NCBI RefSeq assembly: GCF_001194135.2
Contig: NC_068986.1
Location: 70,547,288 to 70,611,287 of the forward strand
Length of the DNA: 64,000 nucleotides
Origin: Octopus bimaculoides
Lineage: Eukaryota
Reading direction: 5' to 3'
This document shows, one piece after another, positions 30,587-59,827 of this stretch. Both the position numbers and the translations under genes were made by a program. Within the stretch, counting starts at the first letter, position 1; the number at the start of each line of letters is the position of its first letter. Under the pieces are notes generated by a model. That model made no database searches. It saw only the letters and a list, made by a program, of their open reading frames with translations, and was not told the DNA's origin.

Positions 30587-30705
30587 ATGGCCGTAAATCA
30601 AAGAAAGAAATTGATTCCTTGGTCAGCCCCTTTAACAAGCCACTACCTAAAGAGGATGAAGATATGTTTATTGAAGACAAACAGTCTTTTAATCAATGGG
30701 ATCCA
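30587..30705 (+). CDS. Coding exon A of PH-actin-fold fusion gene (xGRKSKKEIDSLVSPFNKPLPKEDEDMFIEDKQSFNQWDP)
   Basis: Polypyrimidine tract + ttctag acceptor, gtaag donor; 2 nt + 39 codons, no stop; ends phase 0 and joins exon B in frame. Confidence 0.75.
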
Positions 30706-31309
30706 GTAAGATATTCACTCTTTATATCCCTGTATAAATTTTATTATGTAACTGTGTTGTTATTTTTCACTTAGTCTTTGCATGGTCATCTGTAAACAAG
30801 TGTCAAAATTTCCACAAAAATTGTATTTAGAAACAAGTTGGTATTTAATATGTAACTTAATAGCCTCATTTTGTTTGATACAACAAAGTCTGGGTGACAG
30901 CATGACTTCATACTGAAATTTGATTATTGAATATACATATAACAATATGGCTGACGGGAAGCTAACTTCATTTTCCAATTTAATGGCATCCATGGGTGTT
31001 CAACAACTCTGAAATATCACAAACAAAATTACATAACAAAACAGCTATATCTTAGTGTATACTAAAGTAAGGATAATTATTATTATTTAATTACCAGTGA
31101 GATTACCTCCTGCCTAATATCATGAACTTTATTATATTTCTTTATAATACATTGTCTAGTTATTCTGTCTCCCCAATGGTTAGCCCTAAATGTCAAAGCA
31201 AAAAGTATCCATGAGAATAACATCAATTCAAAAAATAAGGTAGGACTATTTTGTATTTCACATAAATAGTTTCTATTTTGTAAACCAATATAAGCATAGT
31301 TTCATACTT

Positions 31310-31500
31310 CATCACCATCATCATCATTTGATATCCATGTTCCATGCTGGCATGGGTTGGTCTGTTTGATAGGATCCTGTGTATCCAAGGACTGCATCAT
31401 ACTCCAATGTCTGCTTTGGCATGGTTTCTACAGCTGGAAGTCCTTCCTAATGCCAACCACTTTACAATGTGTAATGAATGCTTTTTATATGCCACCCACA
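31310..31500 (-). mobile_element. RTE 3' tail fragment
   Basis: catcatcat...ccatgctggcatgggttgg...tttctacagctgg...cctaatgccaaccactttaca. Confidence 0.75.
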
Positions 31501-31947
31501 CTACTGAGATCACTATGTAGCTCACAGAACTATGAAACCTGGGTGTGGTGGTGGGTGGTCAGTTTAGTACTTGGAAACAAGGAGTTAAACTAAGAGAGAA
31601 AGATTGTCAAAACAGGTTCTTGCATAGGATCTACATAACTACTCACATTTAGAAGAAGAGAAAGGAATGATCGGTAGGGGCTGCAAAGAGATAATAGCAA
31701 TGAAGTGCCCAAGTAGTCCCACGAGACACAAAGTGAGTAGAAGCAGATGGTTTGCAACATTATATGGGGCACATTTAAAATTTTCTATTATAAGGTTTGT
31801 TAGAATCATTAACCCATATTACACAATTTCAGTACTAGTTCTATCTACATTACATTTTGGTCACCAGCTTCTCTATTTATCATCAGTTCCCTTATCTTAT
31901 ATACTTAAATCTGTTTGTAAGTTTTAGGATATACATATATACTCTTT

Positions 31948-32347
31948 CTCTTTTACTCTTTTACTTGTTTCAGTCATTTGACTGTGGCCATGCTGGAGCA
32001 CTGCCTTTAGTCAAGCAAATCGACCCCAGGACTTATTCTTTATAAGCCTAGTACTTATTCTATCGGTCTCTTTTGCCGAACTGCTAAGTTACGAGGACCT
32101 AAACACACCAGCATTGGTTGTCAAGCGATGTTGGGGGGAGAAACACAGACACACATACACATATATATATATATACATATATATGATGGGCTTCTTTCAG
32201 TTTCCGTCTACCAAATCCACTCACAAGGCTTTGGTCAGCCCGAGGCTACAGTAGAAGACACTTGCCCAAGGTGTCACGCAGTGGAACTGAACCCGGAACC
32301 ATGTGGTTCATAAGCAAGGTACTTACCACACAGCTACTCCTACGCCC
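31948..32347 (-). mobile_element. Full-length SINE family C with tRNA-like head and internal (TA)/(CA) microsatellite
   Basis: Reverse complement begins ggcgtaggagtagctgtgtggtaag...ggttccgggttcagttccactgc (A/B-box-like). Confidence 0.85.
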
Positions 32348-32435
32348 TAGAAATATATCTTTAAACCTATCTAGAATTGTATAGTGAACAATGCTTATAT
32401 ATAAATTTTTATATGGGGTACATAAAAACAACTCA

Positions 32436-32810
32436 TCATTATCAACATTTAACGTCCATTTTCTAAGCTGGCATGGGTTAGACAGGAGCTGACCAGCTGA
32501 AGGGCTGTTCAGGCTCTAAGTCTCTTTTGGTATGGTTTCTATGGTTGGATGCCCTTCCTAATGCCAACCACTTTACAGAGTGTACTGGGTGCTTTTACAC
32601 AACACTGGTATGGGTGCTTTTATGCAGCACTGGTACAGGTGCTTTTTACATGGCACCAGCACATACGAGCCCACAAGATTAGGAATGCTCAGCTGGAGAG
32701 GGTTGCAAGGAACAAGCCTGTATGCAAGGACAACCACACTTTTACTTAGCTTGACATGTCTTTTCAAGCACCGTAAACCACCAGGGGCCTCAGTCCTCTG
32801 TGAGTCCCAA
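32436..32810 (-). mobile_element. RTE 3' tail fragment
   Basis: Same 3' UTR consensus as 1363-1600. Confidence 0.7.
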
Positions 32811-33140
32811 TATTTGGGACTCACACAGTATTGGTACATAATAAAAACAACTATATTTTTGAAATCAACACTGTTATTTTAAGTTACACACGGCCACAAA
32901 TTTTATGGAAAGACTGCTGCTGTCAGATGAATTAATCTCAGAACATAACCAATACTTACTTTATTAATCCCTGGGAATAAGAAAAGACAAAACTGAACCT
33001 AGCAAAATTTGAACTCTGTACAACTTAATACTGTTTGAACACTACTACTTTTAAATTCCCACATCATTAGAATAAGGAAAGTTAAATTCTTCCAGACAAT
33101 ACTAAAACCAGATAATCTTATTGTGATAATATTCTCCCAT

Positions 33141-33340
33141 CAAAGGTGGTGAGCTGGTAGAAACATTAGCATGCCAAACAAAATACATAGCGGCTTTTCA
33201 TCCACCTTTATGTATCAAGCTCAACTTTGGCTTTCATCCTTTTGGGATCAATAAAATAAGTGCCAATTGAGCACTGAGATCAATGTAATTGACTTGACCC
33301 CTCCCTGAGCTTGCTGGCCTTGTGCCAAAATTTGAAACAC
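33141..33340 (+). mobile_element. SINE family B
   Basis: aaggtggtgagctggtagaaacattagcatgcc...ggccttgtgccaaaatttgaaa. Confidence 0.8.
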
Positions 33341-34029
33341 TCCCACCAGAAATGTTTTGTCTTTTTAGTCCATATCCTGATACCAAATATGTTCTATCCA
33401 TCTCATCTTTGTTCTGTCCCAGAGTTTTAACAACATTATTTTCATTTTTAATCAGTTAGCTTAAAGCTGTTGTAATCTACTCTCTCAAATAATTGTTTAC
33501 TTATTCTTTAATTAGTTTAAGATTGAAAAATATTTTGAAAAAATAAATTCTTTATATTAGACATTCACAAATAAATTAATAAAATATGCACTTATATATT
33601 TTATATGACATTTGATGAATAAAAGCATGTCAGTTATAGGTTTCCAATGGGATAATTCCTGTTTCATGCTTTGGCCATCAGGCCAGAACAAAATGTACGG
33701 GTGGCCTGCAGTGCAATGGTGTAAAATAAACAAACTTTAGACCAGTTAAAATAGCGAGAATTTTTCTCTTGACAATTACCTTTTTCAGGTCAAATATCTT
33801 TCAAACATATTTGAACTGATCTAAAGTTAGCTTATTTTACACTACTGCTTTTTTTTTTCTTCCTTCTATTTTGTTATCATTGATACATTTTTTGTATTTT
33901 CTCATGGGTGGTGGCTTCTATTCTGTCACCAACAATTTATGGACATACAAGAAACCAAAAACAATTATAAGTATGAAAATTCACTATGTGCTTTACATTG
34001 TTTTGTTTTTTCAATTTCAAATGATGTCA

Positions 34030-34680
34030 CCCCACTGGCTTGGTTAGCAGGCCAGCATTCTCCAGAAGGCTAATCCATCATAAGGTTACCTATTTACAGC
34101 TGAGTAGACCGAAGCAACTTGAAATGAATTGTTTTACTCAAGAATACAACATGCCACTTGGTCCCGGAGTCAAACCCACAATCTGGTGATTGTGATTACA
34201 ACACCCTAACCACTTGATCATGTGCCTTCACAATATATATATATAGTGAAATTTATTGAAAAACAAAAGACGAAGACAGGTGTATGATCAACAAGCAGGT
34301 GTATTAGTTTCATGCTCAAGAAAATGAAAAAGTCTTTTATGTTTTGAGCCTACACTCTTTCAACAGAAAGGAATAAGAAAAAATAAACAGAGAGAGAGTG
34401 AAAAAAACTTGTAGATTTAGCAGTAAAGCATGGCGAATGATTAGAAAAAAGTTTGAAAGAAGAAGTTGAAAGAAAAGGACATAATAAAGTGCTGGTGATC
34501 CCAAATGAAGGTGTGCATGTGTGTGTGTGTGTGTGTGAATAGGGGCTAGTGACTCTGACATGTGTGTCTGTAATGTTTATCTGCTCATATAGTGGTATGT
34601 GTGATGACGCTATTACATATATATTATCGACCACTCATACTCAATTTATAGAAAGAGAAAGTGACCAAGAATGAAAGAGG
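34030..34680 (-). mobile_element. tRNA-headed SINE (34030-34232) followed by a possible Penelope-like terminal fragment (34245-34680)
   Basis: SINE matches 16290-16522; minus strand tcctttctgttgaaagagtgtaggctcaaaacataaaagac resembles PLE 3' ends. Confidence 0.5.
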
Positions 34681-36659
34681 GCTGGAAAGAGAAGGGTGTG
34701 AGATAGTGAGAGAGAAACAGTGACAAAGTGCCAGGGCATACCCTCAAGGTACACATACAGGGATCAGTATGATGGTACGGAGATCAACAATGATGTAAAA
34801 TGAAGCACTGTTGTATTCTATTTTCTAATTCATGTCTCACATAAAATTAAAACTAATAAAAATGATTTCTCCTAATTAGTATCATTAAGAAAGAAGAAGT
34901 ATGAAAATTAAATGCATTTTATTAATAAATCTGTTTGGCTTCTATTTAGATTAGGTATATATTCAATGACCAAATTTATTTTATAAAAAGGAAGTTGTTA
35001 CCTGGCTGCTTTACAATAAGAGTAGCTGTTTTTCCTAAATAATGAAATTGAGTGATTATAGAGAAAATTCTTATATTCAGTATCATTATAATCATCAGTT
35101 TATTAACTGTCTTGTATTGCAATACAATTTTATTTCCTTCAGAAATTTATCTCAAAACTATTGACATCTGTGTGATTCAGACAAAACATAGCACATCCAA
35201 ATGTATCCTAAAACAATTACTGTTGAAAATAGTTTTTATTAGATTATCATTATTAAACTCATTTATTAGTTTGTCATTATTGAGATCATTTTAAAGCTTA
35301 GATTATAACAGCACTGCTTCTTTCATTGACAGTTTCATTATATCAATGTCCTGAATTTGGGTAAACAGTTTTCATGACATACCTCTCTCACTGATTGAAC
35401 CCAATCACTGCTGCATAGCTTGATATCTCTCTTGACAGAATTCTATGAGAAACTTAAAATGAAATTATCAACATTTTGGATCACACCAGAGTTATCCAAT
35501 TCCACTGGTCAAGTGGACCCATTTTGGGGAGCAAAACAGACACTTGTAAGAAATGCCATATCATTATGTGTTTTGTGTTCATTATGAAAGATCTGGTTTT
35601 TCATCAACAACCAGAGCACATCAGACTGAATGTTGTTCTCACACAAACACATATATGACAGACACACACTCATACATTATGAGAAGACAAACAAACCTTT
35701 TCATACTGTTATTTGAAATATTGGCTATTCTCTATTAATTTTGACATGAAAAATGATTTTTGTAGTTATGAACTTTTTCACATTCAGCTTCATTCAATCA
35801 TTCATTTTCATTGAACATTTTATCACAAACTGCTATTAGTTTCTATCGACTTTATTTAGCATGCATTGTCAACTGAAATTTATGTGTATTTTCATCACTT
35901 AGTTGCACATGTTTTTATATTGTGTGGTTTTTCAATATTATTTTTGTATTGTTTCAATCCATGGAGACCAACATATTTTTTGTAACATAATTTATTTTGA
36001 TATGCAAGTTATTATTATTATTTCTCAAATATTCCCTTTGACATTTATTTTGTTTTAAAATCATATATGAGTACAGTAATTCTTATCTGAATTAAGGAAA
36101 TGGTGTATTAACTTGATCCAGTTAATCTTACACATTCTTTTTTATTGGAAATATGCTGTAATTATGTTTAGCACTCTCAATAGTACATTTCACCATTACA
36201 CAATCATAGTGGTATCAGTTTAAAAGTGTTATTAAAACAGCTACTATTGCTGTTGATAATGAGATCTGAATGTCATTGCTTCCCAATGAGTCGACAAACC
36301 ATTATTGAGTGGTTGATAAATGACCCTCTTCAGCCATCAAATGCATTTTGGTTTTCCTATTTCTGCTGCACTTGCTGAGGGATCAAGTTCCTACTGCTAA
36401 GACTAAACAACGTTTAGAAGATCGTTTGCAATCCAGGCATGGACAAATTTGGTTACAGACCTTGCTTCCAACACCCATAAATGTGACAGTAAACTTCATT
36501 ACCAGATGGGAATGAATGCTGGATGTAATAAGGAGGCTAGATTTCTCATAGCATTTGATTTGAAGCACATAAAAATTATGATGTAGGTATATAAGAAAAA
36601 ATTATGGTGATGATGACAGCAGCAGTCTGAATTTAAGACTTTAATATTCAGTTGTGCGT

Positions 36660-36701
<42 letters not shown>

Positions 36702-36705
36702 TGAA

Positions 36706-36975
36706 GGTGTGTAGCCTAGTGGTTAGGGTTTTGCACTCAGGATTGCAACATTGTGGTTTCAATTCCCAGACCAGCAATATATTGTGTTCTTGAATAAAAC
36801 TTCATTTCACATTCTTCCAGTCCACTCAACTGTAAATGAGTAACCTTACGATGGACTGGCATTCTGTTCAGGGGTATGTTGGTTTGCTCATTTAACCAAT
36901 GGGCAGCATCATTCAAATGCTAAAACAATGTGGGGAAGTGCATTGTGACCAGCAGCGTATAACAATATCCAATAG
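36706..36975 (+). mobile_element. tRNA-headed SINE with gatggactggcat...caggggg-type central domain
   Basis: tgtagcctagtggttaggg...ggtttcaattcccagacc A/B boxes. Confidence 0.75.
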
Positions 36976-37910
36976 TCATCGTTTAACGTCCACTTTCCAT
37001 GCTGGCATGGGTTTGACTGAGGCTGGAAAGCCAGAAAACTGCACCAGGCTCCACTCTGATCTGGCAAAGTTTCTACAGCTGGATGCCCTTCCTAACGCCA
37101 ACCACTCTGAGAGTTTAGTGGGTGTTTTTTACGTGCCACCAGCACAAGGGCCAGTCAGGCGGTACTGGCACTGATTGCGCTTGAATGGTGCTTTTTATAT
37201 GGCACTGGCACGGGAGCCAGTCAGGTGGCACTGGCAATGACCATGTTCAAATGGTGCTTTTTATGTGCTACCAGCATGGGACCAGTCAGCCGGCACTGGC
37301 ATCAACTATGCTTGAATGGTGCCACCAGCATGGGAGTCAGTCAGACAGTACTGTCATTGGTCATGACAACAACTTCACTTGCTTCAACAGGTCTTCGCAA
37401 GCACAATTTATTGCCCAATGATTGAAGGGCACTCTTAAATGGGCTGGTTATGCTGCACTGGCATAGGTCACGCTTACAGTCTCACTTGGCGTGCCGGGTC
37501 TTCTAAAGCACAGCATATCTCCAGAGGTCTCAGCCACTTGTCATTGCCTCAGTGAAGCCTAACATTTGAAGGTCGTGCTTCACCACCTCATCCCAGGTCT
37601 TCCTGGGTCTATCTCTTCCACAGGTTCCTTCTACTGCTAGGATGTAACACTTTTTCACACAGCTGTCCTCATCCATATGCAATACCTGACCAAACTAGTG
37701 CAGTCGTCTCTCTTGTACACTACATCTGATGCTTCTCATGCCCAACTTTTCTCTCAGGGCGCTTACACTCGGTCATGTATGCACACTGACATTACACATC
37801 CAGCGGAGCATACTGGCTTCATTCCTTGCAAGCTTACACATGTCCTCAGTAGTCACAGCCCATGTTTCACTGGCATATAGCATGGCTGTTCACACGCATG
37901 CATCATATAG
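36975..37910 (-). mobile_element. RTE LINE 3' fragment (~930 bp)
   Basis: Colinear with 1363-2460, including the 65-bp tandem units and GRPRKTWDEVV. Confidence 0.88.
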
Positions 37911-37913
37911 TCT

Positions 37914-37957
<44 letters not shown>

Positions 37958-38789
37958 CATTATGTATATGTATTACTGTTCATTATGATACCTAATGTAT
38001 TCATAATATAATAATTGTACTTTTCCTGTAAAAGAAAAGTAAAGGGTAGAAGATTTCTTTGTAGCACACCTGAGCACTATATACAATAAGTTCATTACTA
38101 TATTATAAATATTAAGGACATTTAATTATAATGTACATTTTAATGTATTTAATTGTTTTAATACCTTTCTTTCCTTTATAGTTTTACTTTTGATATGTCA
38201 GCTTTTACATTTTAATTTATGTGTTTTAAATTCATTTTCAGTCTGCACTTTTTACGGATTTATACAATATCCATTTGGTTCCTGATGTAAGTTTTACATT
38301 TCATTACAATTAATCCCCAAAATGCAGTTATTTCCTGTCATTATCTTTTACATTTTTTACTAATCACAGTACAAAGAAGGGGGTTGTACATGCATGTATA
38401 AATATAATGTCTCATAATTTCAAGTCCTTTCATTGGGTTGTATTATTAAATAATAATATTTTATCTGAGTAATAAAAAATAACTCTATTCTCAGTTTTTT
38501 TTTTTTGTATTTTATAAATTGTATGATTTAAAAACTAGAAGATAAAAATAAGAAAAGAAACAGATATGTTATACTTGAAAGTAGAATAAACCAATATTAA
38601 TAAATCTACAAAATATTTCTTTGGTTTTACAATAGCCATTTCTGTTTAGCACAGATCACAAATAATGTACTAGTGAAATAACAGATTGACAGAGATCTGC
38701 ATTAACTTTATGTAGGATGCCAGGAAATATGATATATGGTTTGAAAAATAATTTCTGTCAATTGCCTTAGAAAGTTCAAATATATTGCT

Positions 38790-39000
38790 TTAAGTTTTTG
38801 GCACAAGGCCAGCAATTTTGATGAAGGGAGTAAGTCAATTATGTTGACCCCAGCATTCAATTGGTACTTATTTTATCAGCCCCCAAAAGGATGAAAGGCA
38901 AAGTCATCCTTGGAGGAATTTGAACTCAGAATGTTAAGACAAACAAAATGTCGTTAAGCATTTTGCCTGTAGTGCAAACAATTCTGCCTGCTCACTGCCT
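38790..39000 (-). mobile_element. SINE family B
   Basis: ggcacaaggccagcaatttt...aaggatgaaaggcaaagtc...gaatttgaactcagaatg. Confidence 0.8.
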
Positions 39001-41877: not shown

Positions 41878-42021
41878 GATACACAAGATTTTTCCACTGA
41901 TTTTATTGAAATGGAAGGAGTGATGGAAAAACTACCCATGAATAAAAAAAAGTCAACCCTACTGAAAACTTGGAAAAGAAGATATTTTATGGCAAAAAAT
42001 GGATGGCTTGTTTACTATGAT
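41878..42021 (+). CDS. Coding exon B: N-terminal half of PH domain (DTQDFSTDFIEMEGVMEKLPMNKKKSTLLKTWKRRYFMAKNGWLVYYD)
   Basis: ttttcag acceptor, gtacat donor, 48 codons; EG..K...WKRRYF...G.L.YY is the PH beta1-beta3 signature; overlaps ORF 41911..42168. Confidence 0.88.
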
Positions 42022-43461: not shown

Positions 43462-43554
43462 AATTGTGGAGATCAGCAACCCAGTGATGAGATATTGTTG
43501 ATGGGAGGAAACATAACAGTTATGGGCAACAATGTAATTGGTATTGATGATGGC
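43462..43554 (+). CDS. Coding exon C: middle of PH domain (NCGDQQPSDEILLMGGNITVMGNNVIGIDDG)
   Basis: ttttag acceptor, gtaagt donor, 31 codons, phase 0/0, bridges exons B and D in frame. Confidence 0.85.
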
Positions 43555-44435: not shown

Positions 44436-45235
44436 TCATCATCATCATTGTAATGTCCATTTTCCATTTGGCATGGGTTGGATGGTTTGATTGGAGCTGT
44501 TAAGGCCAGGAGCCTCACCAGTCTCCACTGTCTGTTTTGGAATGGTTTCTTTGGCTGGATGCCCTTCCCAACAGCAATTGCCCTATAGAGTGTACTGGGT
44601 GCTTTTTACGTGACATCATCACCAGTGCTTTTAACATGGCACCAGCATGAGTACTTTTTATGTGACACCAGCACCAATATCAATTCTGCTGTAATGAACA
44701 GGTCTTCTTGAATACAGCAATGCGCCAGGTATTTCAGTCCAAAGTCATCGCCTTCATAAGACACAATGCCTTGAAATCAGCCTTCAATACTTTGTCCCAT
44801 GTCTTCTTGGGTTTCTCTCTTCCTCAAGTTCTATCCATTTTAAGCAATCAGCTCTTCATAGTTAAACACATGAGGAATATAATATTTATAATATTTCGGT
44901 CATATTTTCCTCATCTTGAATTTTTATGGTTGAAAAACAGTAAATTTAAAAATCATAATATTGCCTAGAGTCAAAAGCCAGCCAGCTTTGAAAAACAATA
45001 ATTTCTAACATGGGTACAATATTGTAAATTTGTATGAGTGTTCAGGGGTGCTATGGCAATTCATTGATTAAATTGACCCTAGTACTTGATCGAAATGGAT
45101 GAAAGAGCAAGAAGACTGACAGAATTTAAATTCAGATTGTAAGGAGCCAGAACAAATACCACAAGGTACTTTGTTCAGTTCTCCAATGATTCAAAGCAGT
45201 TTGGATTAAGCTTGCATGATTTGAGGCAGTCTGGA
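44436..45235. repeat. Composite block copy 1 (RTE tail + AT-rich spacer + degenerate SINE B)
   Basis: Colinear over about 800 bp with 61295-62049. Confidence 0.85.
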
Positions 45236-46715: not shown

Positions 46716-47520
46716 TCATCATCATCGTTTAACGTCCATTTTCTATACTGACATGGGTTGAATGGCTTAGGAGCTGGCAAACCAGAGGACTGCAGCAAGA
46801 TCCACTGTCTCTTTTTGCATGGTTTTTACAGCTGGATGCTCTTCCTAATGCCAACCAAATTACAGAATGGACTAGGTGCTTTTTATATGGTACCAGCACT
46901 GGTGAGGTCTATTTTAGCATTGTTTTTACAGCTGGGTACCCTTCCTAACACCACCCCTTTACAGAGGGAGTGAATGCATTTTACGTGGCACCAGCATGTT
47001 GAGGTCTGTTTTGGCATGGTTTTTACAGCTGGATGCCCTTCCTAATGTCAACTCTTTACCAAGTGAAGTGAGTGCATTTTACGTGGCACCAGCACTGGTG
47101 AGGTCTGTTTTGACATGATTTTTACAAGTGGTGCCCTTCTTAATGCCAACCACTTTACAGAGTGGACTGAATGCCTTTTTATGTGGCACTAGGACCAGTG
47201 AGATTACCAAGTAACTGGCAAGATGAAGATCCTTTGAGAGGTAGTTTTGTGCCAGGTAATGAGAAGTTAGAACATGATAGAGGGACAGAAAATGGGGGTC
47301 TTGCTGTAGAGGAGATGTACGGTGACCCTAGTTAGAGGGAGACAACAAAAGAGAGAGAGAGTGTGAGTGAGAATGAGAGAGAGCAAAAGTGAGAGGGAGC
47401 AAGAGAGAAGTTGGCAATGTGCCAGGGCATACTCTGAAGGTATGGGGATGAGAATATAAATGAGATGGTAGAACACAGCTGAGTGTGCATGAGTAAGGAG
47501 TTCATGTGAATGCAATAAGT
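46716..47520 (-). mobile_element. RTE-tailed element with four tandem ~98-bp units and a purine-rich (+) distal part
   Basis: Units start near 46813, 46912, 47009, 47108; related two-unit copy at 60362-60920. Confidence 0.75.
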
Positions 47521-49389: not shown

Positions 49390-49801
49390 TAAGTGTAACC
49401 CATGCCAGTGGCACATAAATAGCACCTTTTGTGCCTCATAGAGAGGCCAAGACAACATATTACCAAGACATTTGGCAACATGCTGTGCTCGAAAACAAGA
49501 CACATCAAGCAAAATGAACTTGTAGTCATGGCACATACTGGTGTCATGCAACTGGCACTCATGCCAGTAGCACACAAAAGCACCCATTACACTCTCTGAG
49601 TGGTTGGCATTAGGAAGAGCTTCCAGCCATAGACACTGTACCAAATATGACTAAAGTTTAGTGCAACCCCTTCACTGACCAACCTTGGTCAAACCATTCA
49701 GCATATGCAAGCATGGACAATTGACATTAAATGATGATGATGGTGATGATGTTATATATATATAAGCATATATATATATATACACACACACATATATATA
49801 A

Positions 49802-49841: not shown

Positions 49842-50370
49842 GTCTCTTAAAGGATAGAGCTCAAAATCAATGCATTTTTACGCAGTAAACCGGGCGGTGT
49901 ACGTCGCTGGATTTCGGTTGACTGGTTTGTTTACNNNNNNNNNNNNNNNNNNNNNNNNNNNNNNNNNNNNNNNNNNNNNNNNNNNNNNNNNNNNNNNNNN
50001 NNNNNNNNNNNNNNNNNNNNNNNNNNNNNNNNNNATATATATATATATATATATATGTATATGTATGTATGTGTACATGTGTGTGTATGTATATATGTGT
50101 GTGTATAGATATGTATGTTATCATCATCATCATCATCATTTAACATCCACTTTCCAGGCTGGCATGGATTGGACGGTTTGACTGAAGACTGGTAAACCAA
50201 GAGGCTGCACCAAGCTCCAATCTGTTCTGGCAAGGTTTCTACAGCTAGATACCCTTTGTTATGCCAACCACTCCAAGAGTGCAGTGTGTGCTTTTTACGT
50301 GCCACTGGCACGGGGGCCAGTCAGGTGGCACTGGCATCAACCATGGTGCTATTTACATCCTACCGGCACA
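49390..50370. mobile_element. Two convergent RTE 3' tail fragments (49390-49745 +, 50118-50370 -)
   Basis: First ends attaaatgatgatgat; second starts catcatcatttaacatcc. Confidence 0.75.
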
Positions 50371-50457: not shown

Positions 50458-50670
50458 NNNNNNNNNNNNNNNNNNNNNNNNNNNNNNNNNNNNNNNNNNN
50501 NNNNNNNNNNNNNNNNNNNNNNNNNNNNNNNNNNNNNNNNNNNNNNNNNNNNNNNNNNNNNNNNNNNNNNNNNNNNNNNNNNNNNNNNNNNNNNNNNNNN
50601 NNNNNNNNNNNNNNNNNNNNNNNNNNNNNNNNNNNNNNNNNNNNNNNNNNNNNNNNNNNNNNNNNNNNNN

Positions 50671-50704
<34 letters not shown>

Positions 50705-50834: not shown

Positions 50835-50975
50835 AGGGGTCATTACCTGATGGTGCGATGTCCTTCAGCAAATGAATATGATCAATGGTTAGCTGCACTT
50901 CAGAGTCAAACAGTAGATAACTTAAAAGCTAACTATATCCAGCCTTTGGTAGATGCTCCAAAATCTTCTTATAAG
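50835..50975 (+). CDS. Coding exon D: PH beta7 + C-terminal helix + linker (RGHYLMVRCPSANEYDQWLAALQSQTVDNLKANYIQPLVDAPKSSYK)
   Basis: aatag acceptor, gtaaga donor, 47 codons; EYDQWLAAL is the conserved-Trp PH helix; overlaps ORF 50850..51056. Confidence 0.88.
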
Positions 50976-51105: not shown

Positions 51106-51344
51106 CAATTCTATCAACTAGAAATAGCAACAAAATCACTTTCAAATGACATTCTACGAATTTAAAGGGATAGGTTTATTAGTATGTTCCTAAATATACT
51201 AGACTTGATAAATACAAAAGGTGGAGCAATTCTATCTACTAGAAATAGCAGCAAAATCACCTTCAGATGACCTACTAACTTAAAAGGATGCATTTACTAT
51301 TATGTTCCTAAATATGCTAGGCTTGAAAAATACAAAAGGTTGAA
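51106..51344 (+). repeat. ~120-bp tandem duplication within an unclassified repeat
   Basis: caattctatc.actagaaatagca.caaaatcac.ttca.atgac...atgttcctaaatat.ctag.cttga.aaatacaaaaggt twice; family relative at 44090-44270. Confidence 0.8.
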
Positions 51345-52122: not shown

Positions 52123-52481
52123 AGAGCACTCAGAGAGTGTAAACCTCCTCCAAGGCAACACCAACGTCCTCTCAACGATTAGCCAGAGATGATTTTTAAA
52201 ATGAGAATATCTGAAAATAAACTTGACTGCTCTCACAAACGAGAATACTGAAAATGAACCTGACTGCTCTCAAAAATTAAGTAAAAAAACAGGAAAAATA
52301 AGCTGTAATCCTTGTCCAGTACCAGATCGATCCCAAAATCTAATCAGTTTGTGCCAGTTATGAGGCCAAACATCCCTGAAAGTTTCATCCGAATCTATCC
52401 AGTGGTTCTTGAGATATCTTGTCCACAGACAAATAAACACGATTGAAAACAATACTTCCGTCTTTGCTAAGGCAGAGGTAA
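52123..52481. mobile_element. Helentron/HINE (DINE-1/pearl-like) non-autonomous element
   Basis: Terminal hairpin tacttccgtc-tttgctaa-ggcagaggta, subterminal acctcctccaaggc, internal ~37-bp tandem pair, TAA/TT flanks. Confidence 0.65.
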
Positions 52482-52559
52482 TAATTTTAAAGAATGTAGT
52501 TTCAGGTAAATAATTGTGCAGTGCTAATTATGAAGAGAGGCTAGATGATAAACTCTCGT

Positions 52560-52890
52560 GGCATAAAATTACTATACATCATTAGATTGCTGTAGAATAG
52601 TGAGGAATAGAAATACCTAGGGAAAGTGTAAGTCAATAGGATAATGAAAGAGGAAATTAGAGAGAAAATCTTTAAAAAGTACAAGAGGAGAATTAGTAAT
52701 GTGCTTGAAACAAAGTTAAATGAAAGGAATATCATTAAAGCAATAAATACAAGGGCTATGTCAGTATTAGGATACTCTGCTCCTTTTCTGAAATGGGCAA
52801 AATTTGAGCTACAAAACTTAGAGAGAAGAACTAGAAAGCTGCTCACAATGCACAAGGTACACCACCCTAAAAGTAACACTGACATACTCT
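52560..52890 (+). mobile_element. R4/Dong-like non-LTR retrotransposon, post-RT fragment
   Basis: ORF 52644..52967: YKRRISNVLETKLNERNIIKAINTRA...ERRTRKLLTMHKVHHPKS. Confidence 0.8.
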
Positions 52891-53959
52891 GTGTGCCTGA
52901 ATCCCATACAAGATTGAGCCATGTGTACAATAATATTATGCATGTCACCAAGAAAATCCCTCCCTAGTTCATAAATGGAGCAACATGCTTACTCCCCAAA
53001 AGTGATGAAAGTAATAACCCTCAAAAAAAACTAATAACATACTTTACAGCCATGTATAAAATACCCACATCTATCATTACTGTAAAAACCCATGTAATTT
53101 ATGCACTTTTTTCGCAAAAACAAAAATAAACTTTAGGGGTATGTAAATTACATGAGTAGACCGTTTCCAGAATTTTTTTAGAAATTTTTTGTCAGAATTG
53201 GTTTTTACAGAAAAAATATAATGAAGTTGACTTTTATTTATGCTGGACAGGATAATGCTTACTTTTTCTGTATAAATTTGCTAAAACCATTAAATGGTTA
53301 ACTACTTTTTGAAGTTTGACTTTCATGCTAGTAATCATGGTCTGGGTCATATTTTACATTGCTTGGAGTTTCTACATATTGCAATGGAGCCCAGCAATTT
53401 CCTTAAATAGATCAGTTTTTCTCCGCTTAGGGAGTCTAGCTTGTGTTTGCACCAGGAAGCTATTTGCTCGCTTTCTCCACGTTATGACACAATGAAGATC
53501 CAATACAGTCATTGATTGGTTAAAATTACCCAAATACGACAACTTTAACATGAAATAACTTCTAAATTACAAAATTTTGTCAAAAACGTTAAGAGTAAAC
53601 CCTGTTCTACATAACACATTCTACCAGTATCCAAAATTTCAAAGTGTTTAGTTTTAAAAAATTAATTAAAAAATCTGTATGTGAAATGGAATAGATCCTG
53701 AAATTCCTCACCACCGATATCACCGCGCTATCAGTCCTTACTGCATCTAACATCGACATCATAATTAATCCTTGTGCATGTAAACTCACTAAGTGAATAT
53801 GACTTAGCATTCCTACAGAAACCTTCATTTACCCTAGACAATGTCTAATGTTGTTTCACATTCATGTTGAATTATGCAGCAATCTTGTTCTCTTCATAGA
53901 ACACTTGTAATGTATGTATTACCAGTTCTTTTGGTATAGTAGATTTTTGCTATTCTTAT

Positions 53960-54730
53960 TTATGTCTCCTCACAGACGTGTATATTCTAACAAGTTGCTT
54001 CTTAAAGGTATTACATGGTCAATACTCTACAAGCGCCAGTGATCCTGATCTTGATAAAAATATGATCTGTCAGTGGTTGGCTGTATCTAGACTTAAAATC
54101 AAAAACAGAGGGCTTCATTATAGCAGCTCAGAATCAGTGTTAGCCCACTAGAAATTACCAAGCCAACATTCTTAAAAATAGTGCTGCTTATACTTGCTGC
54201 TTTTGCAGTGCAACCGGAGAAACAATTGACTACCTCATCTCTGGATGCTCTATGTTAGCCTCAAATGTGTATACTAATTGCTATGATAGACTTGGTCAAT
54301 ATTTGCACAGAACTACATGCCATTAGTTTGGATTGCCATATGGGAGAAACTGGTGGAAACACAAGCCTGGCAAAGTAATAGAAAATAAGGACATCACCAT
54401 TCTTTGGGACTTTAGTATTCAAACTGATCAAGCTATTTAGGTCTATAGATCAGATAATATATTGAAAAATCATGTTTTCTCATAGATATGTCAATCCCAT
54501 CAGATTGCAACATTTGGAAAATTAAGTAAATACAAGGACCTTGAAATAAAGATCACAAAAATGTGGCATCTAAGAACAACAACTGTAACTGATCACTGGA
54601 ACTTTGGGGATAATACCAAATGGTGCTTTTAAATACTGAGGTCAAATATCGGGAAACACTAAAGTGTCAGAACTATAAAAAATTGTTCTTTAGGGTGGAG
54701 CCCACATTCTAAGAGAAACACTGTTGACCT
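53960..54730 (+). mobile_element. R4/Dong-like retrotransposon, CCHC + restriction-like endonuclease fragment
   Basis: LHGQY, TEGFIIAAQNQ, CCFC..TGETIDYLISGC, ITILWDFSIQTD, KYKDLEI; stops and frameshifts. Confidence 0.8.
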
Positions 54731-54999
54731 GAGAATATCTGAATCTTTCCAAATCTTTCAAAGTCAGAAATTTTACTACAAACTTTTAATGAAATCTCAA
54801 TTCTCCTTATTTGGTTTCCTTTTCCTGCAATATTTCATTTCTACTCATAAATAACACCCACAGTAAAACATTCAACTTACTGTTACTTGAGATCTCTTAC
54901 TGAGATTTGGAATAGCTCATATAAAACAAAGCAATAACAACAATAGAAACATAATAATAATGATGATGATGATAATAATAATAATAATAATCCTTTCTA

Positions 55000-57145
55000 A
55001 TAATAATAAAAATCCTTTCAGGCACAATGCCTGAAATTTTTGTGAGTAGGGTTAGTCAACTACATCGACCCCAGTGTTTGGTACGTATTTTATCAACCCT
55101 GAAAGGATGAAAGGCAAAGTCAACCTTGACAGTATTTGAACTCAGAATGTAAAATCAGAAGAAATGCCACTAAGTATTTTGTCCACCATGCTAACTGTTT
55201 TGCCAGCTCAGTGCTTTAATAATGATGGATACTCTCATCAAAAACGACATATCAGTGTTCAGCTTTTGCTGAACAATCTGCACAAATGATTTGTTTATAA
55301 TGATCAAAAGCTGTACATTAGCTCACTTCCTCTACCAAATCGACATTGCCTGAACAAGAGCACAGTGCACCACACATCAGGTGTCAAAGTGATTGCAGAG
55401 AAACATAAGTTGAAGTGATTTGCTCAAGAACACAGTGCACCACCTGGTCTAGGAATTGAAACCATCATCATGAGCACAACAACCAAAGCCATGTGCCCTC
55501 ACTAATAATAATAATGATAATAATAATGATAATAATAATAATGATAATAATANNNNNNNNNNAATAATAATAATAATAATGATAATAACAATAATAATAA
55601 TAATAATAATAAGGAAAAAAATGAAGGAAAAAAATGCTTTCTAATTGATGTATCAATACCAGCAGATGACAAAGTTTCCCTAAAAGAAATGGAGAAACTT
55701 TCAAAATACAAAGACCTGGAAATAGATAACTCGAATGTGGAATCTAAAAACAGAAACAATTCCTCTCATAGTAGGTGCCTTAGGTATAATAAAAAAATAT
55801 TCAGACAAATACATAACAAAAACACCAGGACTTACAAATATATATAATATACAGAAAATTGCACTACTGGGCACTGCACACATCCTACGCAAAACACTTT
55901 CAATACAGTAACCATAAGAGCATCACAGCAAAACACAGCACATACCCAAGGCACACAGAGCTGCGCTCGGTAGTGAAGTGAAAGCACGTTATAAAAATAA
56001 AACTACTGAACAATAATAATAATAATAATAATAATAATGATAATAATCCTTTCTTACTTTGGCATAAGGCCAGCAGAGTTGAGGGATGGGGAAGTTGATT
56101 ATATCGACCCCAGTGCCCAGCTGATATGCATTTTATCAGCCCTGAAATGATGAAAGGTAAAATCAACCTCAGCAGAATTTTAACTCAGATCATGAAGTGA
56201 GGCAAAATGCTACTAAGTATTTTGTTCAGCATGCTAGTGATTCTACCCACTCCCTGCTTTAATAATAATAATAATAGTTTTAGTTATTTGCCACCAAGGT
56301 GGATGAGGAGGAACAATATAAAGACAGACACAAAGTGTGGGGACTTACATATAATGAAATGATAAAATAATTTTTTTAAAAAGGGGTAAGTATCCATGGT
56401 ACACAATGAAAAGGAAGGGAAATATGCATAGTATACAAAGTTTAAAAAAAGCTGAGTACGCAATGATAGGGATGTAGCCCTCCTGATACAGAATGACCTC
56501 TAGGGATAATCGAAGAACCCCACTGATAATAATAATCATTTAGGCACAAGGCCAACAATTTTTGAGTGAGGAGGTTAGTAGATTGCATTGACCCCTGTAC
56601 TTGACTGGTACTTTATTTTATCAATCTTTGAGTGATAAAAATCAAAATTGATCTCAGTATGATTTGAACTCAGAACATAAAATAATAATAGTTAAGAAAA
56701 AAATCAAAAGCATTTTTGAGTTGGCTGAAAACAAGTTGATGAACCAAGCATGCAGGATCCAAAGAAGTGGTTTGGCTATACCAGTAAAAACAGAGGTTAG
56801 AGACAATTAGTGAGGTGACAGTGTTGGATAAACTTATATTCTCAGAAAAGTATTTTCTGTTTAAAGCACTTTAGTGTGCACAAAAAAACAACAAAAGCCA
56901 GTATTTTATATCCTTACTGTGCAATGAAATATTGGTTCTAAATTTTGGCACAAGGCCAGCAACTTCAGGGGAGGAGGTAAGTTGATTACATTGACCACAG
57001 TGTTCAACTGGTACTTATTTTATCGACCCTGAAAGGATGAAAGGTAAAGTTGACCTCAGCAGAATTTGAACACAGAATGTAAAATTGGATGAAATGTCAC
57101 TAAGCATTTTGCCCAGTGTGCTTACAACTCTGCCAGCTCACCACT
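55000..57145 (-). mobile_element. Cluster of four family B SINEs (55000-55215, 56045-56260, 56530-56690, 56930-57145) plus one tRNA-headed SINE (55250-55500)
   Basis: Repeated ggcacaaggcc...gaccc..gtg...aaggatgaaagg...gaatttgaactcagaa, most preceded on + by (TAA)n tails. Confidence 0.8.
55612..56011 (+). mobile_element. Well-preserved R4/Dong-like 3' fragment inside a (TAA)n array
   Basis: KKCFLIDVSIPADD...EKLSKYKDLEI...IVGALG...IQKIALLGTAHILRKTLSIQ*, flanked by (TAA)n at 55502-55611 and 56012-56046. Confidence 0.85.
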
Positions 57146-57245
57146 TTACTATGCAATGAAATATTACTGATAATAATATTGTTGATATTTTCATCTTATT
57201 AAAAAGACTGTAAGAATCAAGTTCTGTTCACTTATCTTGTTACAG

Positions 57246-57306
57246 AATGTCCTGATTGTTGAAATGGGAAGTATGTCAGTTAGAGCTGGCATTTTGAAAG
57301 AAAATG
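57246..57306 (+). CDS. Coding exon E: actin-family phosphate-1 motif (NVLIVEMGSMSVRAGILKEN)
   Basis: ttacag acceptor, gtaagt donor, 20 codons + 1 nt; aligns to actin ALVVDNGSGMCKAGF and ACTL6-type VFDIGSYTVRAGY. Confidence 0.85.
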
Positions 57307-58009
57307 GTAAGTACTCTTTTCCAAACATATTACCACTAATTTCCCTACTTTGTGAGGCTTATTTTTTTTTCTATAGCTATCCTCTTCCATAACTCTTTGT
57401 CCTTACTTCCCACTTCACATACATTTTTATTTAACATGGTTTCTTTTGTCATAGTCAAGGTAACCTACTCTGGAGGGTAGCTATTGCAAAGAAAATAATC
57501 TTAAAAAGCTTTAATTCTTTAGGTCTTATCAATGATAAGCTAGATATACAAGTACAACTCTAACTCAAATATATTTTTTGCTATTCATTTGTTCTTTTTT
57601 CTCTTTATCTTATATTTCTTTCACCACAATAATACCTCTGTATAACCATTTGTATTGTTTTAGTGGTAACATCAAGCTTAGTTTCACAAAAAGTAATTTG
57701 CCTAAAACAGCAACTATTCTGATATAAAACTGATATAAGATAGTCATGAACTTTTGTCTTGTTAGACTATTTTCAAGTGCAAGTGCCTCAGTATATAACC
57801 ATAAGTGAATAATAGACGTCTGTGCGAATATATAGGTACACACACTCATACACGGATATTTTCATTATGTACAACAGAAGCAGTATTAGTTTAAAATAGC
57901 AATCTGTATATCCTATTCAAAGCAGATTTAATACTGTATGTCTCAGGACAAATACTAAAGTTAATTAGGCTTTTCATGGTGTGTCTACTTTTAATATGAT
58001 ACTCAGATT

Positions 58010-58312
58010 GCACATGGCTTAGCGGTGAGAGTATTCGGCTTATGGCTATAAGGTCATGAGTTCAATTCCCAGCACACATTGTGCCCTTGAGCAAGACACT
58101 TTATTTCACGTTGCTTCAATCACTCAGCTGGCAAAGATGTATTTCAAAGGACCAATCTTTTCACATTTTGTTTCACACTAAATCTCCAAGAACTACGTTA
58201 AGGGTACACATGTCTGTGGAGTGCTCAGCCACTTGCATGTTAATTTCACAAGCAAACTGCTCCATTGATCAGATGAACTGGAACCCTTGTCATCATAACT
58301 GACAAAGTGCCA
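58010..58312 (+). mobile_element. tRNA-headed SINE
   Basis: tggcttagcggtgagag...gagttcaattccc...ttgagcaagacactttatttcacgttgct; 3' half is the inverse of 7882-8060. Confidence 0.8.
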
Positions 58313-58318
58313 TGTATG

Positions 58319-58374
<56 letters not shown>

Positions 58375-58844
58375 CACACATAATTAGCATCATTTGAAAG
58401 CTGCTAAAATGATGTATAATGCATTTTGACCAAGATGTATAACAACATCCAATAGTTTCATTGATCATGAGATCACATCATATAAATGTAGCATGTGTCT
58501 TCTACTATAGCCCCAAGCCAACTAATGCCTTGTGAGTGAATTTGATATACAGAAATTGTAGAAAACTTACAATATATATGTGTGTGTGCATGCACATGTG
58601 TGCACACATGTGCATAAATGTTAATATTCCACACTTGACACCATATGAGAAAAACAGTTATGATGACAATTTCTGTTGACATTGTGATTGGTCACTCTGC
58701 ACTTTCTGAATAAAAAATAAGAAGTGGCAATGGGAGGAAAACCTGGCCATAAAGTCCTACCTCAAAAGATTTCCCATCCAACCTATATTGGCATGGAAAA
58801 ACAAATGTTAAACAAACAAATTAATATAAGTTAAAGCCATCTGA

Positions 58845-59095
58845 ATGCTAGTGACACTTGAAGAGGAGAGGGGACGTGTTGCAAGATTCACAGACAGCAG
58901 GTGGACCCGTACAGCTGCTGAATGGTATCCAAGAAATTGGAAAAGGCCACTTGGAAGGCCTCCACAACAATGGGAAGACGATTTAGTCAAGCAATTTGGA
59001 TCAAGCTGGAAAAGAATGGCACAATCAAGACAATATTGGAAGTGCATTGTGACCAATGGTTTATCACAGCATCTGATGGTCTGATCAATACTGTG
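58845..59095 (+). mobile_element. RTE-1-type LINE 3' end
   Basis: GRVARFTDSRWTRTAAEWYPRNWKRPLGRPPQQWEDDL. Confidence 0.85.
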
Positions 59096-59678
59096 ATATA
59101 TATATATATCCAGCTTATTCTGCTGTAAAACACCGTCCAAACTGAACAATAAAAAATGATGTGATAATTTTCTGTTTTGATTATAATCAACAAAATTGAA
59201 TTGATTTTTGATATTTTTCAGATTATCATTTTATTCATATGATTTGGATAGTACCTCCAGTCTGGTAGTGAATCACTGTTAGATGCCTCCTCTTCTAATT
59301 TCAATTAATCATTCATAAATTAGATTTATTAATCTATAAGCTGACATATAGATCAATTATGCAGTTTCCAATTCAGAAAAACCTATCTCTTCTTAAATGA
59401 ATATCCGAGGAACTTAATTTCCCTAAGGCCTAATTATTACTAAATTCATATAATATGATTTGGAACTTCTGTATTTTTGTTTAATGATGTTTATGTACCA
59501 TAAGCTTGAGCAGGTTTTTAAATTGTTGCAATTCCTGATATTCTTTCAGCCAATTAAGTGATACTCTTTTACTTGTTAGTTTCTTTATATGCTCAGACTT
59601 TATGCAGTTTTTTTTCCCCCTCAATATTCACAGACAAACATTTCCAAAGCTTCATTGACTCTCCGCTTTCTGTTACAG

Positions 59679-59827
59679 TCACTTTGCCTCAGATCTTCTT
59701 CCCTAGTGTTGTTGCAGTAAACCATTCTGAAAAGAAACATTTTGTTGGATTTGAAGCTTATAAACCCAAGAATCGTCTTTCTTCAAAGATCATACATTTA
59801 TTTGGACTTTCGGACAAAGTAAATAAG
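59679..59827 (+). CDS. Coding exon F: actin-fold subdomain 1/2 (VTLPQIFFPSVVAVNHSEKKHFVGFEAYKPKNRLSSKIIHLFGLSDKVNK)
   Basis: ttacag acceptor, gtaaga donor; phase matches exon E (G+TC=Val); P..FPSVV...FVG.EA aligns to actin PRAVFPSIV...YVGDEA; overlaps ORF 59558..59845. Confidence 0.85.

What the first reader, a model, noticed from the sequence alone, without database searches (positions are those of the whole stretch)
30587..59827. Cryptic multi-exon gene encoding a PH domain fused directly to an actin-fold domain
Seen: six small AG/GT-bounded exons (707 nt in total, introns 11172/1440/7280/6270/2372 nt) join in compatible phases into 235 stop-free codons. The ORF track shows only pieces of three exons. 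Established: the product has a complete PH domain (EG..K...WKRRYF to EYDQWLAAL). After a ~25-aa linker come the actin-family P1 motif (VLIVEMGSMSVRAG) and the P..FPSVV...FVG.EA segment. Conventional actins and Arp1-10 have no N-terminal PH domain. Inference: this is a membrane-lipid-targeted actin-related protein that could couple phosphoinositide signalling to the cytoskeleton. It is the best candidate for an uncharacterised system here. I cannot tell whether the architecture is already annotated in other invertebrates.
Basis: partly seen in the sequence, partly recalled or inferred. Interest (0 to 1): 0.88.

Follow-up and report, generated by a model that had tools for sequence, protein, structure and literature searches.

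The report
Octopus gene: PH domain plus actin-like domain
The exons are real and belong to the middle of a very large octopus gene whose protein ends in a lipid-binding-type PH domain joined to a divergent actin-like domain; automatic pipelines have already predicted this protein in many invertebrates, but I found no study of it.

Summary
The six exons have the stated coordinates, canonical splice sites and compatible phases, giving 235 stop-free codons. All three assembly gaps lie in introns. The Octopus sinensis orthologue is collinear across them, so they hide no coding sequence.

Corrections:
- The gene is not cryptic. It is the orthologue of O. sinensis LOC115213538, an "uncharacterized protein" of 2473 aa.
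- The window holds only residues about 1917-2167. About 1900 N-terminal residues with no Pfam domain, and about 300 residues of the actin domain, lie outside it.

The PH-actin link is not a gene-model artefact. Single uninterrupted ORFs and an mRNA-like contig from other animals encode both domains. The module occurs in molluscs, annelids, brachiopods, bryozoans, nemerteans, rotifers, crustaceans, myriapods, odonates, nematodes and starfish. No functional name is attached to any of them, and I found no paper on the family.

The actin domain is 24-34% identical to beta-actin. It keeps the nucleotide-site core but lacks the D-loop and His161. I read it as a non-polymerising actin-related protein, probably membrane-recruited; that function is inferred only.

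The parts
25872..25929 (+). Possible alternative first exon (MGKEDIQYAETDMSVMTLE + 1 base), used by the older truncated gene model P0001. Uncertain.
   Evidence: tblastn of P0001 is 100% identical here. An ATG and a GTGAGT donor are present. The exon is absent from O. sinensis isoform X7 (P0066), whose upstream residues are not found anywhere in the window.
30587..30705 (+). Exon A. It starts with 2 bases that complete a codon, so an upstream exon exists. It encodes GRKSKKEIDSLVSPFNKPLPKEDEDMFIEDKQSFNQWDP, and its last three residues (WDP) start the conserved W-D-P-x-x-L-L-x-x-L-Y motif.
   Evidence: acceptor ttctag|AT, donor CCA|GTAAGA. tblastn hit to P0066 aa 1917-1955.
38242..38286 (+). It carries the L-x-x-L-Y part of the conserved helix motif.
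   Evidence: ttttcag|TCT ... GAT|GTAAGT, phase 0 at both ends. Present in P0001 and P0066. The motif is conserved in 86 family modules.
41878..42021 (+). Exon B: linker plus the first strands of the PH domain (MEGVMEKLPMNKKKSTLLKTWKRRYFMAKNGWLVYYD), including the basic K...K-R-R signature.
   Evidence: 96% identity to P0066, E 6e-25. Pfam PH.
43462..43554 (+). Exon C: middle strands of the PH domain (NCGDQQPSDEILLMGGNITVMGNNVIGIDDG).
   Evidence: 97% identity.
50835..50975 (+). Exon D: last strand and C-terminal helix of the PH domain (RGHYLMVRCPSANEYDQWLAALQSQ) plus the linker to the actin domain.
   Evidence: 96% identity, E 5e-22. Homologues align exactly from 50835 to 50975.
57246..57306 (+). 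Exon E: first strand and phosphate-1 loop of the actin fold (NVLIVEMGSMSVRAGILKEN).
   Evidence: Aligns to actin residues 8-24.
59679..59827 (+). Exon F: actin subdomain 2 region with the shortened D-loop (TLPQIFFPSVVAVNHSEKKHFVGFEAYKPKNRLSSKIIHLFGLSDKVNK). It is the last exon of the gene inside the window.
   Evidence: The next exon (FKIEYEIFPSVF... in P0066) is not found up to position 64000.

Best explanation
The region holds seven consecutive coding exons on the + strand, possibly with an eighth as an alternative first exon. They come from the middle of a large gene, the orthologue of Octopus sinensis LOC115213538 (2473 aa). The protein has three parts:
- a long N-terminal region of about 1900 aa with no recognisable domain, outside the window;
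- a short conserved helix motif W-D-P-x-x-L-L-x-x-L-Y;
- a PH domain joined by a linker of about 25 residues to a complete but divergent actin-fold domain.

Shown:
- the exon structure;
- the domain identities;
- that PH and actin sit on one polypeptide;
- that the module is conserved across Spiralia, Ecdysozoa and at least starfish.

Inferred mechanism:
- The PH domain keeps the basic K-Xn-K-R-R signature of phosphoinositide-binding PH domains, so it probably brings the protein to phosphoinositide-rich membranes.
- The actin-fold domain keeps the core of the nucleotide site: Gly13, Gln137, Asp154, Gly156, Arg210, Glu214 and Gly301/302.
- It has lost the D-loop and His161. It carries Arg or His in place of Gly158, and it does not conserve the lateral filament contacts.
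- It is therefore unlikely to be a normal filament subunit.
- It more likely works as a nucleotide-binding actin mimic held at a membrane. It could offer its fairly well kept barbed-end cleft (Tyr143, Gly168, Tyr169) to an actin filament end, to an actin-binding protein, or to its own W-D-P helix as an auto-inhibitory plug.
For: Exons and frame.

Orthology and collinearity with O. sinensis XP_036360167.1.

Domains:
- Pfam PH on the window product scores 32.7 bits.
- Pfam on P0066 gives PH at 1982-2074 and Actin at 2097-2469, 156.8 bits.

One polypeptide:
- uninterrupted ORFs of 616, 1408 and 587 aa with PH+Actin on L001, L005 and L006;
- a rotifer-like ORF on L002 running from the PH domain into the actin P1 loop;
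- a 637-aa ORF on the 3.65-kb mRNA-like contig L003.

Family size and breadth: more than 100 representatives at 50% clustering match the PH+actin profile nearly end to end, at 300-937 bits, against about 240 bits for actin-domain-only matches.

Fold: an AlphaFold2 model of the Lottia orthologue shows a PH fold plus an actin fold. Foldseek TM-score is 0.84 to G-actin at 27-28% identity.

Residue conservation over 86 modules.

The closest solved PH domains are cytohesin and GRP1, aligned over the WKRR strand.
Against: - No expression, localisation or binding data exist for this gene or any orthologue that I could find.
- Most PH domains do not bind phosphoinositides strongly. The match to GRP1 is weak (E 3e-4) and one GRP1 ligand position (Arg305) is not kept.
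- The substitutions at Gly15, Gly158, Lys336 and Tyr306 could abolish nucleotide binding altogether.
- For this species, the join between the window's exons and the distant N- and C-terminal exons is inferred from the sister species only.
Confidence: 0.62

Rival explanations
1. The PH part and the actin-like part are two neighbouring genes or transcripts, wrongly joined by reading compatible splice phases.
For: An older model for this species (P0001) ends after exon C by reading into the intron. The cuttlefish model P0002 skips exon D. Automatic models around this junction are therefore unstable.
Against: PH and actin lie in one uninterrupted ORF on L001, L005 and L006, and on the mRNA-like contig L003. 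More than 100 representative proteins from many phyla match the joint profile end to end. The O. sinensis RefSeq protein is collinear with all the window's exons.
Confidence: 0.03
2. The actin-like domain is a polymerising actin isoform tethered to membranes by the PH domain. It would be incorporated into filaments as a membrane anchor subunit.
For: The best sequence and fold matches are conventional actins rather than any Arp. Gln137, Asp154, Gly156, Gly301/302 and part of the barbed-end cleft are conserved.
Against: - Identity to actin is only 24-34%.
- D-loop residues 44-50 are deleted in at least 79 of 86 members.
- His161 is deleted in all 86.
- Gly158 is Arg or His in 80 of 86.
- Lateral contact residues 110-115 are about 6% conserved.

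From general knowledge, these features are needed for normal filament contacts and polymerisation-coupled ATP hydrolysis.
Confidence: 0.1
3. The PH domain is not a lipid binder. It would be a protein-interaction or intramolecular regulatory module, and the protein would be a soluble or nuclear scaffold, as with orphan or chromatin Arps, whose long disordered N-terminus carries the real function.
For: From general knowledge, only a minority of PH domains bind phosphoinositides specifically. The PH match to lipid-binding PH domains is weak. The N-terminal extensions are huge (700-3000 aa in many species) and lysine-rich.
Against: The basic signature is strongly conserved over 86 members: K of EKLP in 69 of 86, then K100 in 75, R101 in 72 and R102 in 72 (K or R), followed by Tyr. 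That is what purifying selection on a phosphoinositide pocket would give. The N-terminal region is not conserved in length or sequence, and the ~600-aa forms lack it.
Confidence: 0.2
4. The locus is a decaying or non-functional copy (a pseudogene) in this genome.
For: The region is dense with interspersed repeats and assembly gaps. The only model on record for this species is truncated (P0001).
Against: All seven exons have an open frame, canonical splice sites and 90-97% protein identity to the sister species. No stop or frameshift was found.
Confidence: 0.03

Closest known systems
Octopus sinensis LOC115213538 (XP_036360167.1, 'uncharacterized protein', 2473 aa) and its automatically predicted orthologues, e.g. 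Lottia gigantea LOTGIDRAFT_164583 / V4BM15, Lingula LOC106163389 and Asterias rubens LOC117307187
   Same: Direct orthologue: same exons at 90-97% identity. Same order of W-D-P helix motif, PH domain, linker and actin fold.
   Different: No difference in kind. The window holds only aa ~1917-2167. None of these entries has a functional name or a study attached.
Conventional actin (Pfam PF00022; e.g. beta-actin, rabbit G-actin structures)
   Same: Same four-subdomain fold (TM 0.84). The nucleotide-site core is conserved: Gly13, Gln137, Asp154, Gly156, Glu214 and Gly301/302.
   Different: - Only 24-34% identity.
- D-loop shortened by about 8 residues.
- His161 deleted.
- Gly158 replaced by Arg or His, and Gly15 lost.
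- A 5-residue insert after actin residue ~74.
- N-terminal PH domain plus a long extension.
Actin-related proteins (Arp1-Arp11, and orphan Arps such as mammalian ACTL7/ACTRT and Drosophila Arp53D)
   Same: A divergent actin fold in the identity range typical of Arps. Like the Arp2/3 subunits, it may act as an actin mimic rather than a filament subunit (general knowledge).
   Different: To my knowledge, no described Arp class has a PH domain. The best solved-structure matches are actins, not Arp1/2/3/4/5/6/8/11, so it is not an orthologue of those classes. A formal tree was not built.
Actin-domain fusion proteins: Dictyostelium filactin and primate POTE-actin fusions
   Same: A full actin-family domain at the C-terminus of a larger multi-domain protein (general knowledge; filactin is discussed in PMC2441452, listed).
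   Different: The N-terminal partners differ (filamin/Ist1-like or ankyrin repeats, not PH). Those fusions are lineage-restricted and carry near-canonical actin, whereas this module is divergent and spread across bilaterian phyla.
Cytohesin/GRP1-type PH domains
   Same: Closest solved PH sequences. Shared strand motif KTWKRR(W/Y)F and a following Tyr, which are residues used for phosphoinositide head-group binding in GRP1 (ligand roles from general knowledge).
   Different: The similarity is weak (E 3e-4, mostly one strand pair). One GRP1 ligand position (Arg305) is not kept. There is no Sec7 domain.

Membership tests
PH domain (Pfam PF00169) | Profile match above Pfam's gathering score, over the whole domain | tested here: met
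   The window product scores 32.7 bits against a cut-off of 25.1, covering profile 2-103 of 105. The orthologue P0066 scores 30.4 bits.
PH domain (Pfam PF00169) | Seven-stranded beta sandwich closed by a C-terminal helix | tested here: met
   The AlphaFold2 model of the Lottia orthologue has strands 106-184 and helix 188-202, with pLDDT about 72-87. This is a model of an orthologue, not of the octopus protein.
Phosphoinositide-binding PH domains | Basic K-Xn-(K/R)-X-R signature in strands 1-2 | tested here: met
   EKLP...KTWKRRYF is encoded in the window. It is conserved in 69-75 of 86 family members at each basic position.
Phosphoinositide-binding PH domains | Measured lipid binding or membrane localisation | not testable with these tools
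   Needs liposome or lipid-strip assays and imaging.
Actin family / actin fold (Pfam PF00022) | Profile match above the gathering score | tested here: met
   The window fragment alone scores 13.3 bits (below 27), because only about 70 residues are present. The full orthologue scores 156.8 bits, E 8e-46, covering profile 5-406 of 410. Other members score 155-240 bits.
Actin family / actin fold (Pfam PF00022) | Four-subdomain actin fold | tested here: met
   Foldseek of the Lottia model against the PDB: top 50 hits are all actin entries (one an Arp4-actin complex), TM 0.78-0.85 normalised to target, E about 1e-28.
Conventional actin | Very high sequence conservation, with an intact D-loop, His161, and Gly15 and Gly158 in the phosphate loops | tested here: not met
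   24-34% identity. D-loop 44-50 deleted. His161 deleted in 86 of 86. Gly158 is Arg or His in 80 of 86. Gly15 is kept in 2 of 86.
Known Arp classes (Arp1, 2, 3, 4, 5, 6, 8, 10/11) | Orthology to one class, i.e. that class being the closest relative | tested here: not met
   All 60 best of 159 PDB sequence matches are conventional actins, although Arp structures are in the PDB. No phylogeny was built, so the result is indicative only.
PH-actin family (orthologues of LOC115213538; unnamed) | The order W-D-P-x-x-L-L-x-x-L-Y motif, PH domain, ~25-aa linker, actin fold with a short D-loop | tested here: met
   The motif, the PH domain, the linker and the first ~70 residues of the actin fold with the short D-loop are all encoded in the window. 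The rest of the actin domain lies outside the window.

The most novel reading that the evidence does not exclude
This is a previously unrecognised, ancient class of actin-related protein. It would be a 'PH-Arp' present in the bilaterian ancestor. It is kept in molluscs, annelids, brachiopods, bryozoans, nemerteans, rotifers, several arthropod lineages, nematodes and echinoderms. It was not seen here in vertebrates or Drosophila. It would work as a phosphoinositide-recruited, nucleotide-binding actin mimic that caps, seeds or anchors actin filaments, or docks actin-binding proteins, at membranes. Its own conserved W-D-P helix might regulate it.
Probability: 0.3. Interest if true: 0.8.

Novelty: new variant of a known kind. 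Interest (0 to 1): 0.6.

Why it matters
Actin-related proteins are few, ancient and mostly well studied. Each class has turned out to run a distinct piece of machinery, such as Arp2/3 branching, dynactin or chromatin remodellers.

This would be a further class, conserved across many animal phyla and carrying its own membrane-targeting domain. It was not seen here in vertebrates or Drosophila, which could explain why it has been overlooked.

If the mechanism holds, it would be a direct, single-protein link between phosphoinositide signals and actin-like assemblies. It is easy to test in tractable animals that have it, such as Lottia, Owenia, Brachionus or sea stars.

For genome annotation, the case shows that this locus was under-annotated in this species (a model truncated before the actin domain), and that a conserved 45-nt microexon is easy to miss.

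Tried and rejected
1. I looked in the window for the next exon after 59827 and for the upstream exons of the 2473-aa orthologue, using permissive tblastn. None was found, so the gene runs off both ends.

I used database homologues instead.

3. A three-sequence MAFFT alignment misaligned the truncated cuttlefish model, so I discarded it.

4. Adding beta-actin with mafft --keeplength gave an off-register alignment. I redid it with L-INS-i.

5. I tried to name the organisms behind the intron-less cluster (P0048, P0050, P0072). I obtained only metagenome record names and animal-type neighbouring genes, so the lineage stays unknown.

6. An exact look-up of P0066's genomic locus found nothing on record.

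7. A nematode member (P0157) maps to assembly GCA_024699835.1, and I could not name the species. Whether C. elegans has an orthologue is unresolved.

8. Eight literature searches found no description of a PH-actin protein. The library is incomplete, so this is absence of evidence only.

9. Pfam on four repeat-like ORFs in the window gave no hits.

10. I could not inspect model coordinates, so I could not test whether the W-D-P helix docks on the actin domain.

Full report
**What the window is**

The window is AT-rich (35% G+C) animal DNA. It has six runs of N and many interspersed repeats. Its exons are 100% identical to an old UniParc entry, P0001 (UPI00071CCAA8). They are 90-97% identical to a RefSeq protein of Octopus sinensis. 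The window therefore comes from a close relative of O. sinensis.

**Checking the observation**

I rebuilt the six exons from the raw sequence. The frame that starts at 30589 runs for 235 codons without a stop. One detail needs correcting: the real donor of exon A is CCA|GTAAGA, so A ends at 30705 and B begins at 41878. This does not change the spliced sequence.

The scan program asked for the assembly gaps to be tested first.
- Gaps 49935-50034 and 50458-50670 lie in the intron between exons C and D.
- Gap 55553-55562 lies in the intron between D and E.
- The gaps at 49935 and 50458 are flanked by simple-sequence DNA that translates as runs of Y-I and of H-T; the 55553 gap is flanked by other simple repeats.
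- The O. sinensis orthologue aligns to exons C, D and E as residues 2019-2049, 2050-2096 and 2096-2116 with nothing missing.

The gaps therefore hide no coding sequence and do not disturb the frame.

**Why this is not chance**

Every exon is found by tblastn with homologues from cuttlefish, gastropods, bivalves and an annelid. Their local alignments stop exactly at the proposed exon borders, for example 41878-42021, 43462-43554, 50835-50975 and up to 59827.

P0001 and the O. sinensis protein contain 15 residues (SALFTDLYNIHLVPD) between exons A and B. They are encoded by a 45-nt microexon at 38242-38286. It has a good acceptor and a GTAAGT donor and is in phase 0 at both ends.

This microexon carries most of a motif, W-D-P-x-x-L-L-x-x-L-Y, that is among the best conserved features of the whole family. 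Over 86 members, W is kept in 83, P in 84 and Y in 82.

P0001 also uses a short first exon at 25872-25929. P0001 is otherwise a truncated model that reads into the intron after exon C. The O. sinensis isoform has different upstream sequence, which is not in the window. I therefore list that exon as uncertain.

**What the gene is**

A word-indexed search with the spliced product found few relatives. They were enough to build profiles.

I then ran a profile search of 1.84 billion representative proteins. It found well over 100 representatives matching PH plus actin nearly end to end, at 300-937 bits. Matches covering only the actin domain scored about 240 bits.

One representative is XP_036360167.1, 'uncharacterized protein LOC115213538 isoform X7' of O. 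sinensis, 2473 aa.
- Pfam finds PH at 1982-2074 and a full Actin domain at 2097-2469 (156.8 bits, E 8e-46).
- Pfam finds nothing in the first 1900 residues.
- The window's seven exons correspond to residues 1917-2167.

The finding is thus the middle of a much larger, already annotated but unnamed gene. It is not a cryptic self-contained gene.

**Is the PH-actin link real?**

Both fail to refute.
- The downstream exons of the orthologue complete the actin domain.
- The two domains are encoded by single uninterrupted reading frames in other animals. These are 616 aa on L001, 1408 aa on L005 (inside an animal genome contig with fibrinogen, eIF2B-epsilon and fibronectin-type neighbours) and 587 aa on L006.
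- A rotifer-like ORF on L002 runs from the PH domain into the actin phosphate-1 loop.
- A 3.65-kb contig from a sequencing run (L003) carries a 637-aa ORF with the motif, PH and actin, followed by about 1.4 kb without a long ORF. That is what a spliced mRNA looks like.

**Distribution**

Names attached by the sources place members in these groups:
- gastropods, bivalves and cephalopods;
- annelids (Owenia, Capitella, Dimorphilus);
- a brachiopod (Lingula), a bryozoan (Watersipora) and a nemertean (Lineus);
- rotifers (Brachionus);
- decapods (Panulirus, Petrolisthes), a millipede and odonates (Ladona, Hetaerina);
- nematodes (Steinernema, Trichinella);
- starfish (Asterias).

Every name is generic: 'uncharacterized', 'hypothetical', 'PH domain-containing protein', 'actin' or 'actin-like', plus two obvious mis-transfers. 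I saw no vertebrate or Drosophila member, but I could only name a sample of the hits. Total length varies from about 600 to about 3000 aa because of a non-conserved N-terminal extension.

**Structure and residues**

An AlphaFold2 model of the Lottia orthologue has mean pLDDT 73 and pTM 0.65. It shows a seven-strand-plus-helix PH fold followed by an actin fold. Foldseek puts G-actin structures on top, with TM 0.84 relative to the target and 27-28% identity. By sequence, the best 60 of 159 matching PDB sequences are all conventional actins, not Arps.

I aligned 86 family modules with beta-actin. Identity is 24-34%.

Kept:
- Gly13 (86/86), Gln137 (85/86), Asp154 (74/86), Gly156 (86/86);
- Arg210, Glu214, Gly301/302 and Arg335;
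- part of the barbed-end cleft (Tyr143, Gly168, Tyr169).

Lost in essentially all members:
- D-loop residues 44-50 (deleted);
- His161 (deleted);
- Gly158 (Arg or His in 80/86);
- Gly15, Lys336 and Tyr306;
- the lateral-contact stretch 110-115.

The octopus and cuttlefish proteins have Glu instead of Asp at position 11.

In the PH domain the basic signature EKLP...K-x-W-K-R-R-Y-F is strongly conserved. The nearest solved PH sequences are cytohesin and GRP1, aligned over that strand (weak).

**How it most likely works**

These steps are inferred, not shown.
- The conserved basic pocket suggests the PH domain recruits the protein to phosphoinositide-containing membranes.
- The actin fold probably still binds a nucleotide. 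Without a D-loop, His161 or lateral contacts, it should not behave as a normal filament subunit.
- It more likely acts as an actin mimic at the membrane. It could be a docking or capping unit for a filament end or for actin-binding proteins, perhaps gated by its own W-D-P helix. The variable N-terminal tail would serve as a scaffold.

Rivals are scored in the report sections:
- a tethered polymerising actin (disfavoured by the residue losses);
- a PH domain used for protein contacts rather than lipids (not excluded);
- a mis-joined pair of genes (excluded);
- a pseudogene (no sign of one).

**Novelty**

Eight full-text searches found no paper on a PH-actin protein, on LOC115213538, or on an Arp with a PH domain. 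The library is incomplete, so this is not proof.

The object itself is already in the databases as an unnamed prediction. What may be new is recognising it as a distinct, phylum-spanning class of actin-related protein. I rate it a new variant of a known kind, with moderate-to-high interest.

Noticed in passing
window 1364-1542, 6772-6853, 22816-22960, 23538-23681, 31301-31620, 32514-32596, 37038-37106, 44437-44568, 46717-46889, 47004-47189, 49576-49749, 50121-50305, 60274-60630, 61382-61476: A short interspersed repeat, roughly 80-190 bp matched at 75-87% identity. It gives 17 matches (the query's own copy included) on both strands, mostly in the introns of this gene. In translation it gives the recurring 'LDALPNANH' pseudo-ORFs. 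It looks like a SINE-type element.
   Followed up: partly
window 2251-3873 (- strand): Two adjacent ORFs (138 and 179 aa) look by eye like fragments of a non-LTR retrotransposon polyprotein. Pfam gave no hit, so this is unconfirmed.
   Followed up: partly
window 58845-59084 (+), inside intron E-F: A 79-aa ORF (…RWTRTAAEWYPRNWKRPLGRPPQQWEDDLVKQFG…) resembles the tail of a retroelement-derived protein. There was no Pfam hit.
   Followed up: partly
window 4144-4840, 9994-10093, 49935-50034, 50458-50670, 55553-55562, 62373-62382: Four of the six assembly gaps (4144, 9994, 49935, 50458) abut simple-sequence DNA that translates as runs of Y-I; the 62373 gap abuts a run that translates as H-T, and the 55553 gap abuts other simple repeats. 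The gaps probably mark unresolved simple repeats rather than missing unique sequence.
   Followed up: partly
L001 1986-3836; L005 10001-14227; L006 1375-3138: One sub-group of the family (P0048, P0050, P0072 and about 15 more representatives) is encoded without introns, in unidentified animals from marine metagenome assemblies. In the octopus the same region is split by at least seven introns over 29 kb.
   Followed up: partly
family alignment, actin position 158 (not in window; downstream exon): The glycine of the second phosphate loop (Gly158 in actin) is replaced by a conserved Arg (63/86) or His (17/86). The next-but-two residue, His161, is deleted in all members. This is a family-specific rebuild of the catalytic loop, and I have no explanation for it.
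   Followed up: no
Trichinella pseudospiralis proteins in cluster of P0163: Some database models of the nematode member are named 'Resistance to inhibitors of cholinesterase protein 3'. A Plakobranchus member is named 'histone-lysine N-methyltransferase SETMAR', and a Biomphalaria one 'mucin-19'. These look like name transfers from fused neighbours or repeats, not real functions.
   Followed up: no
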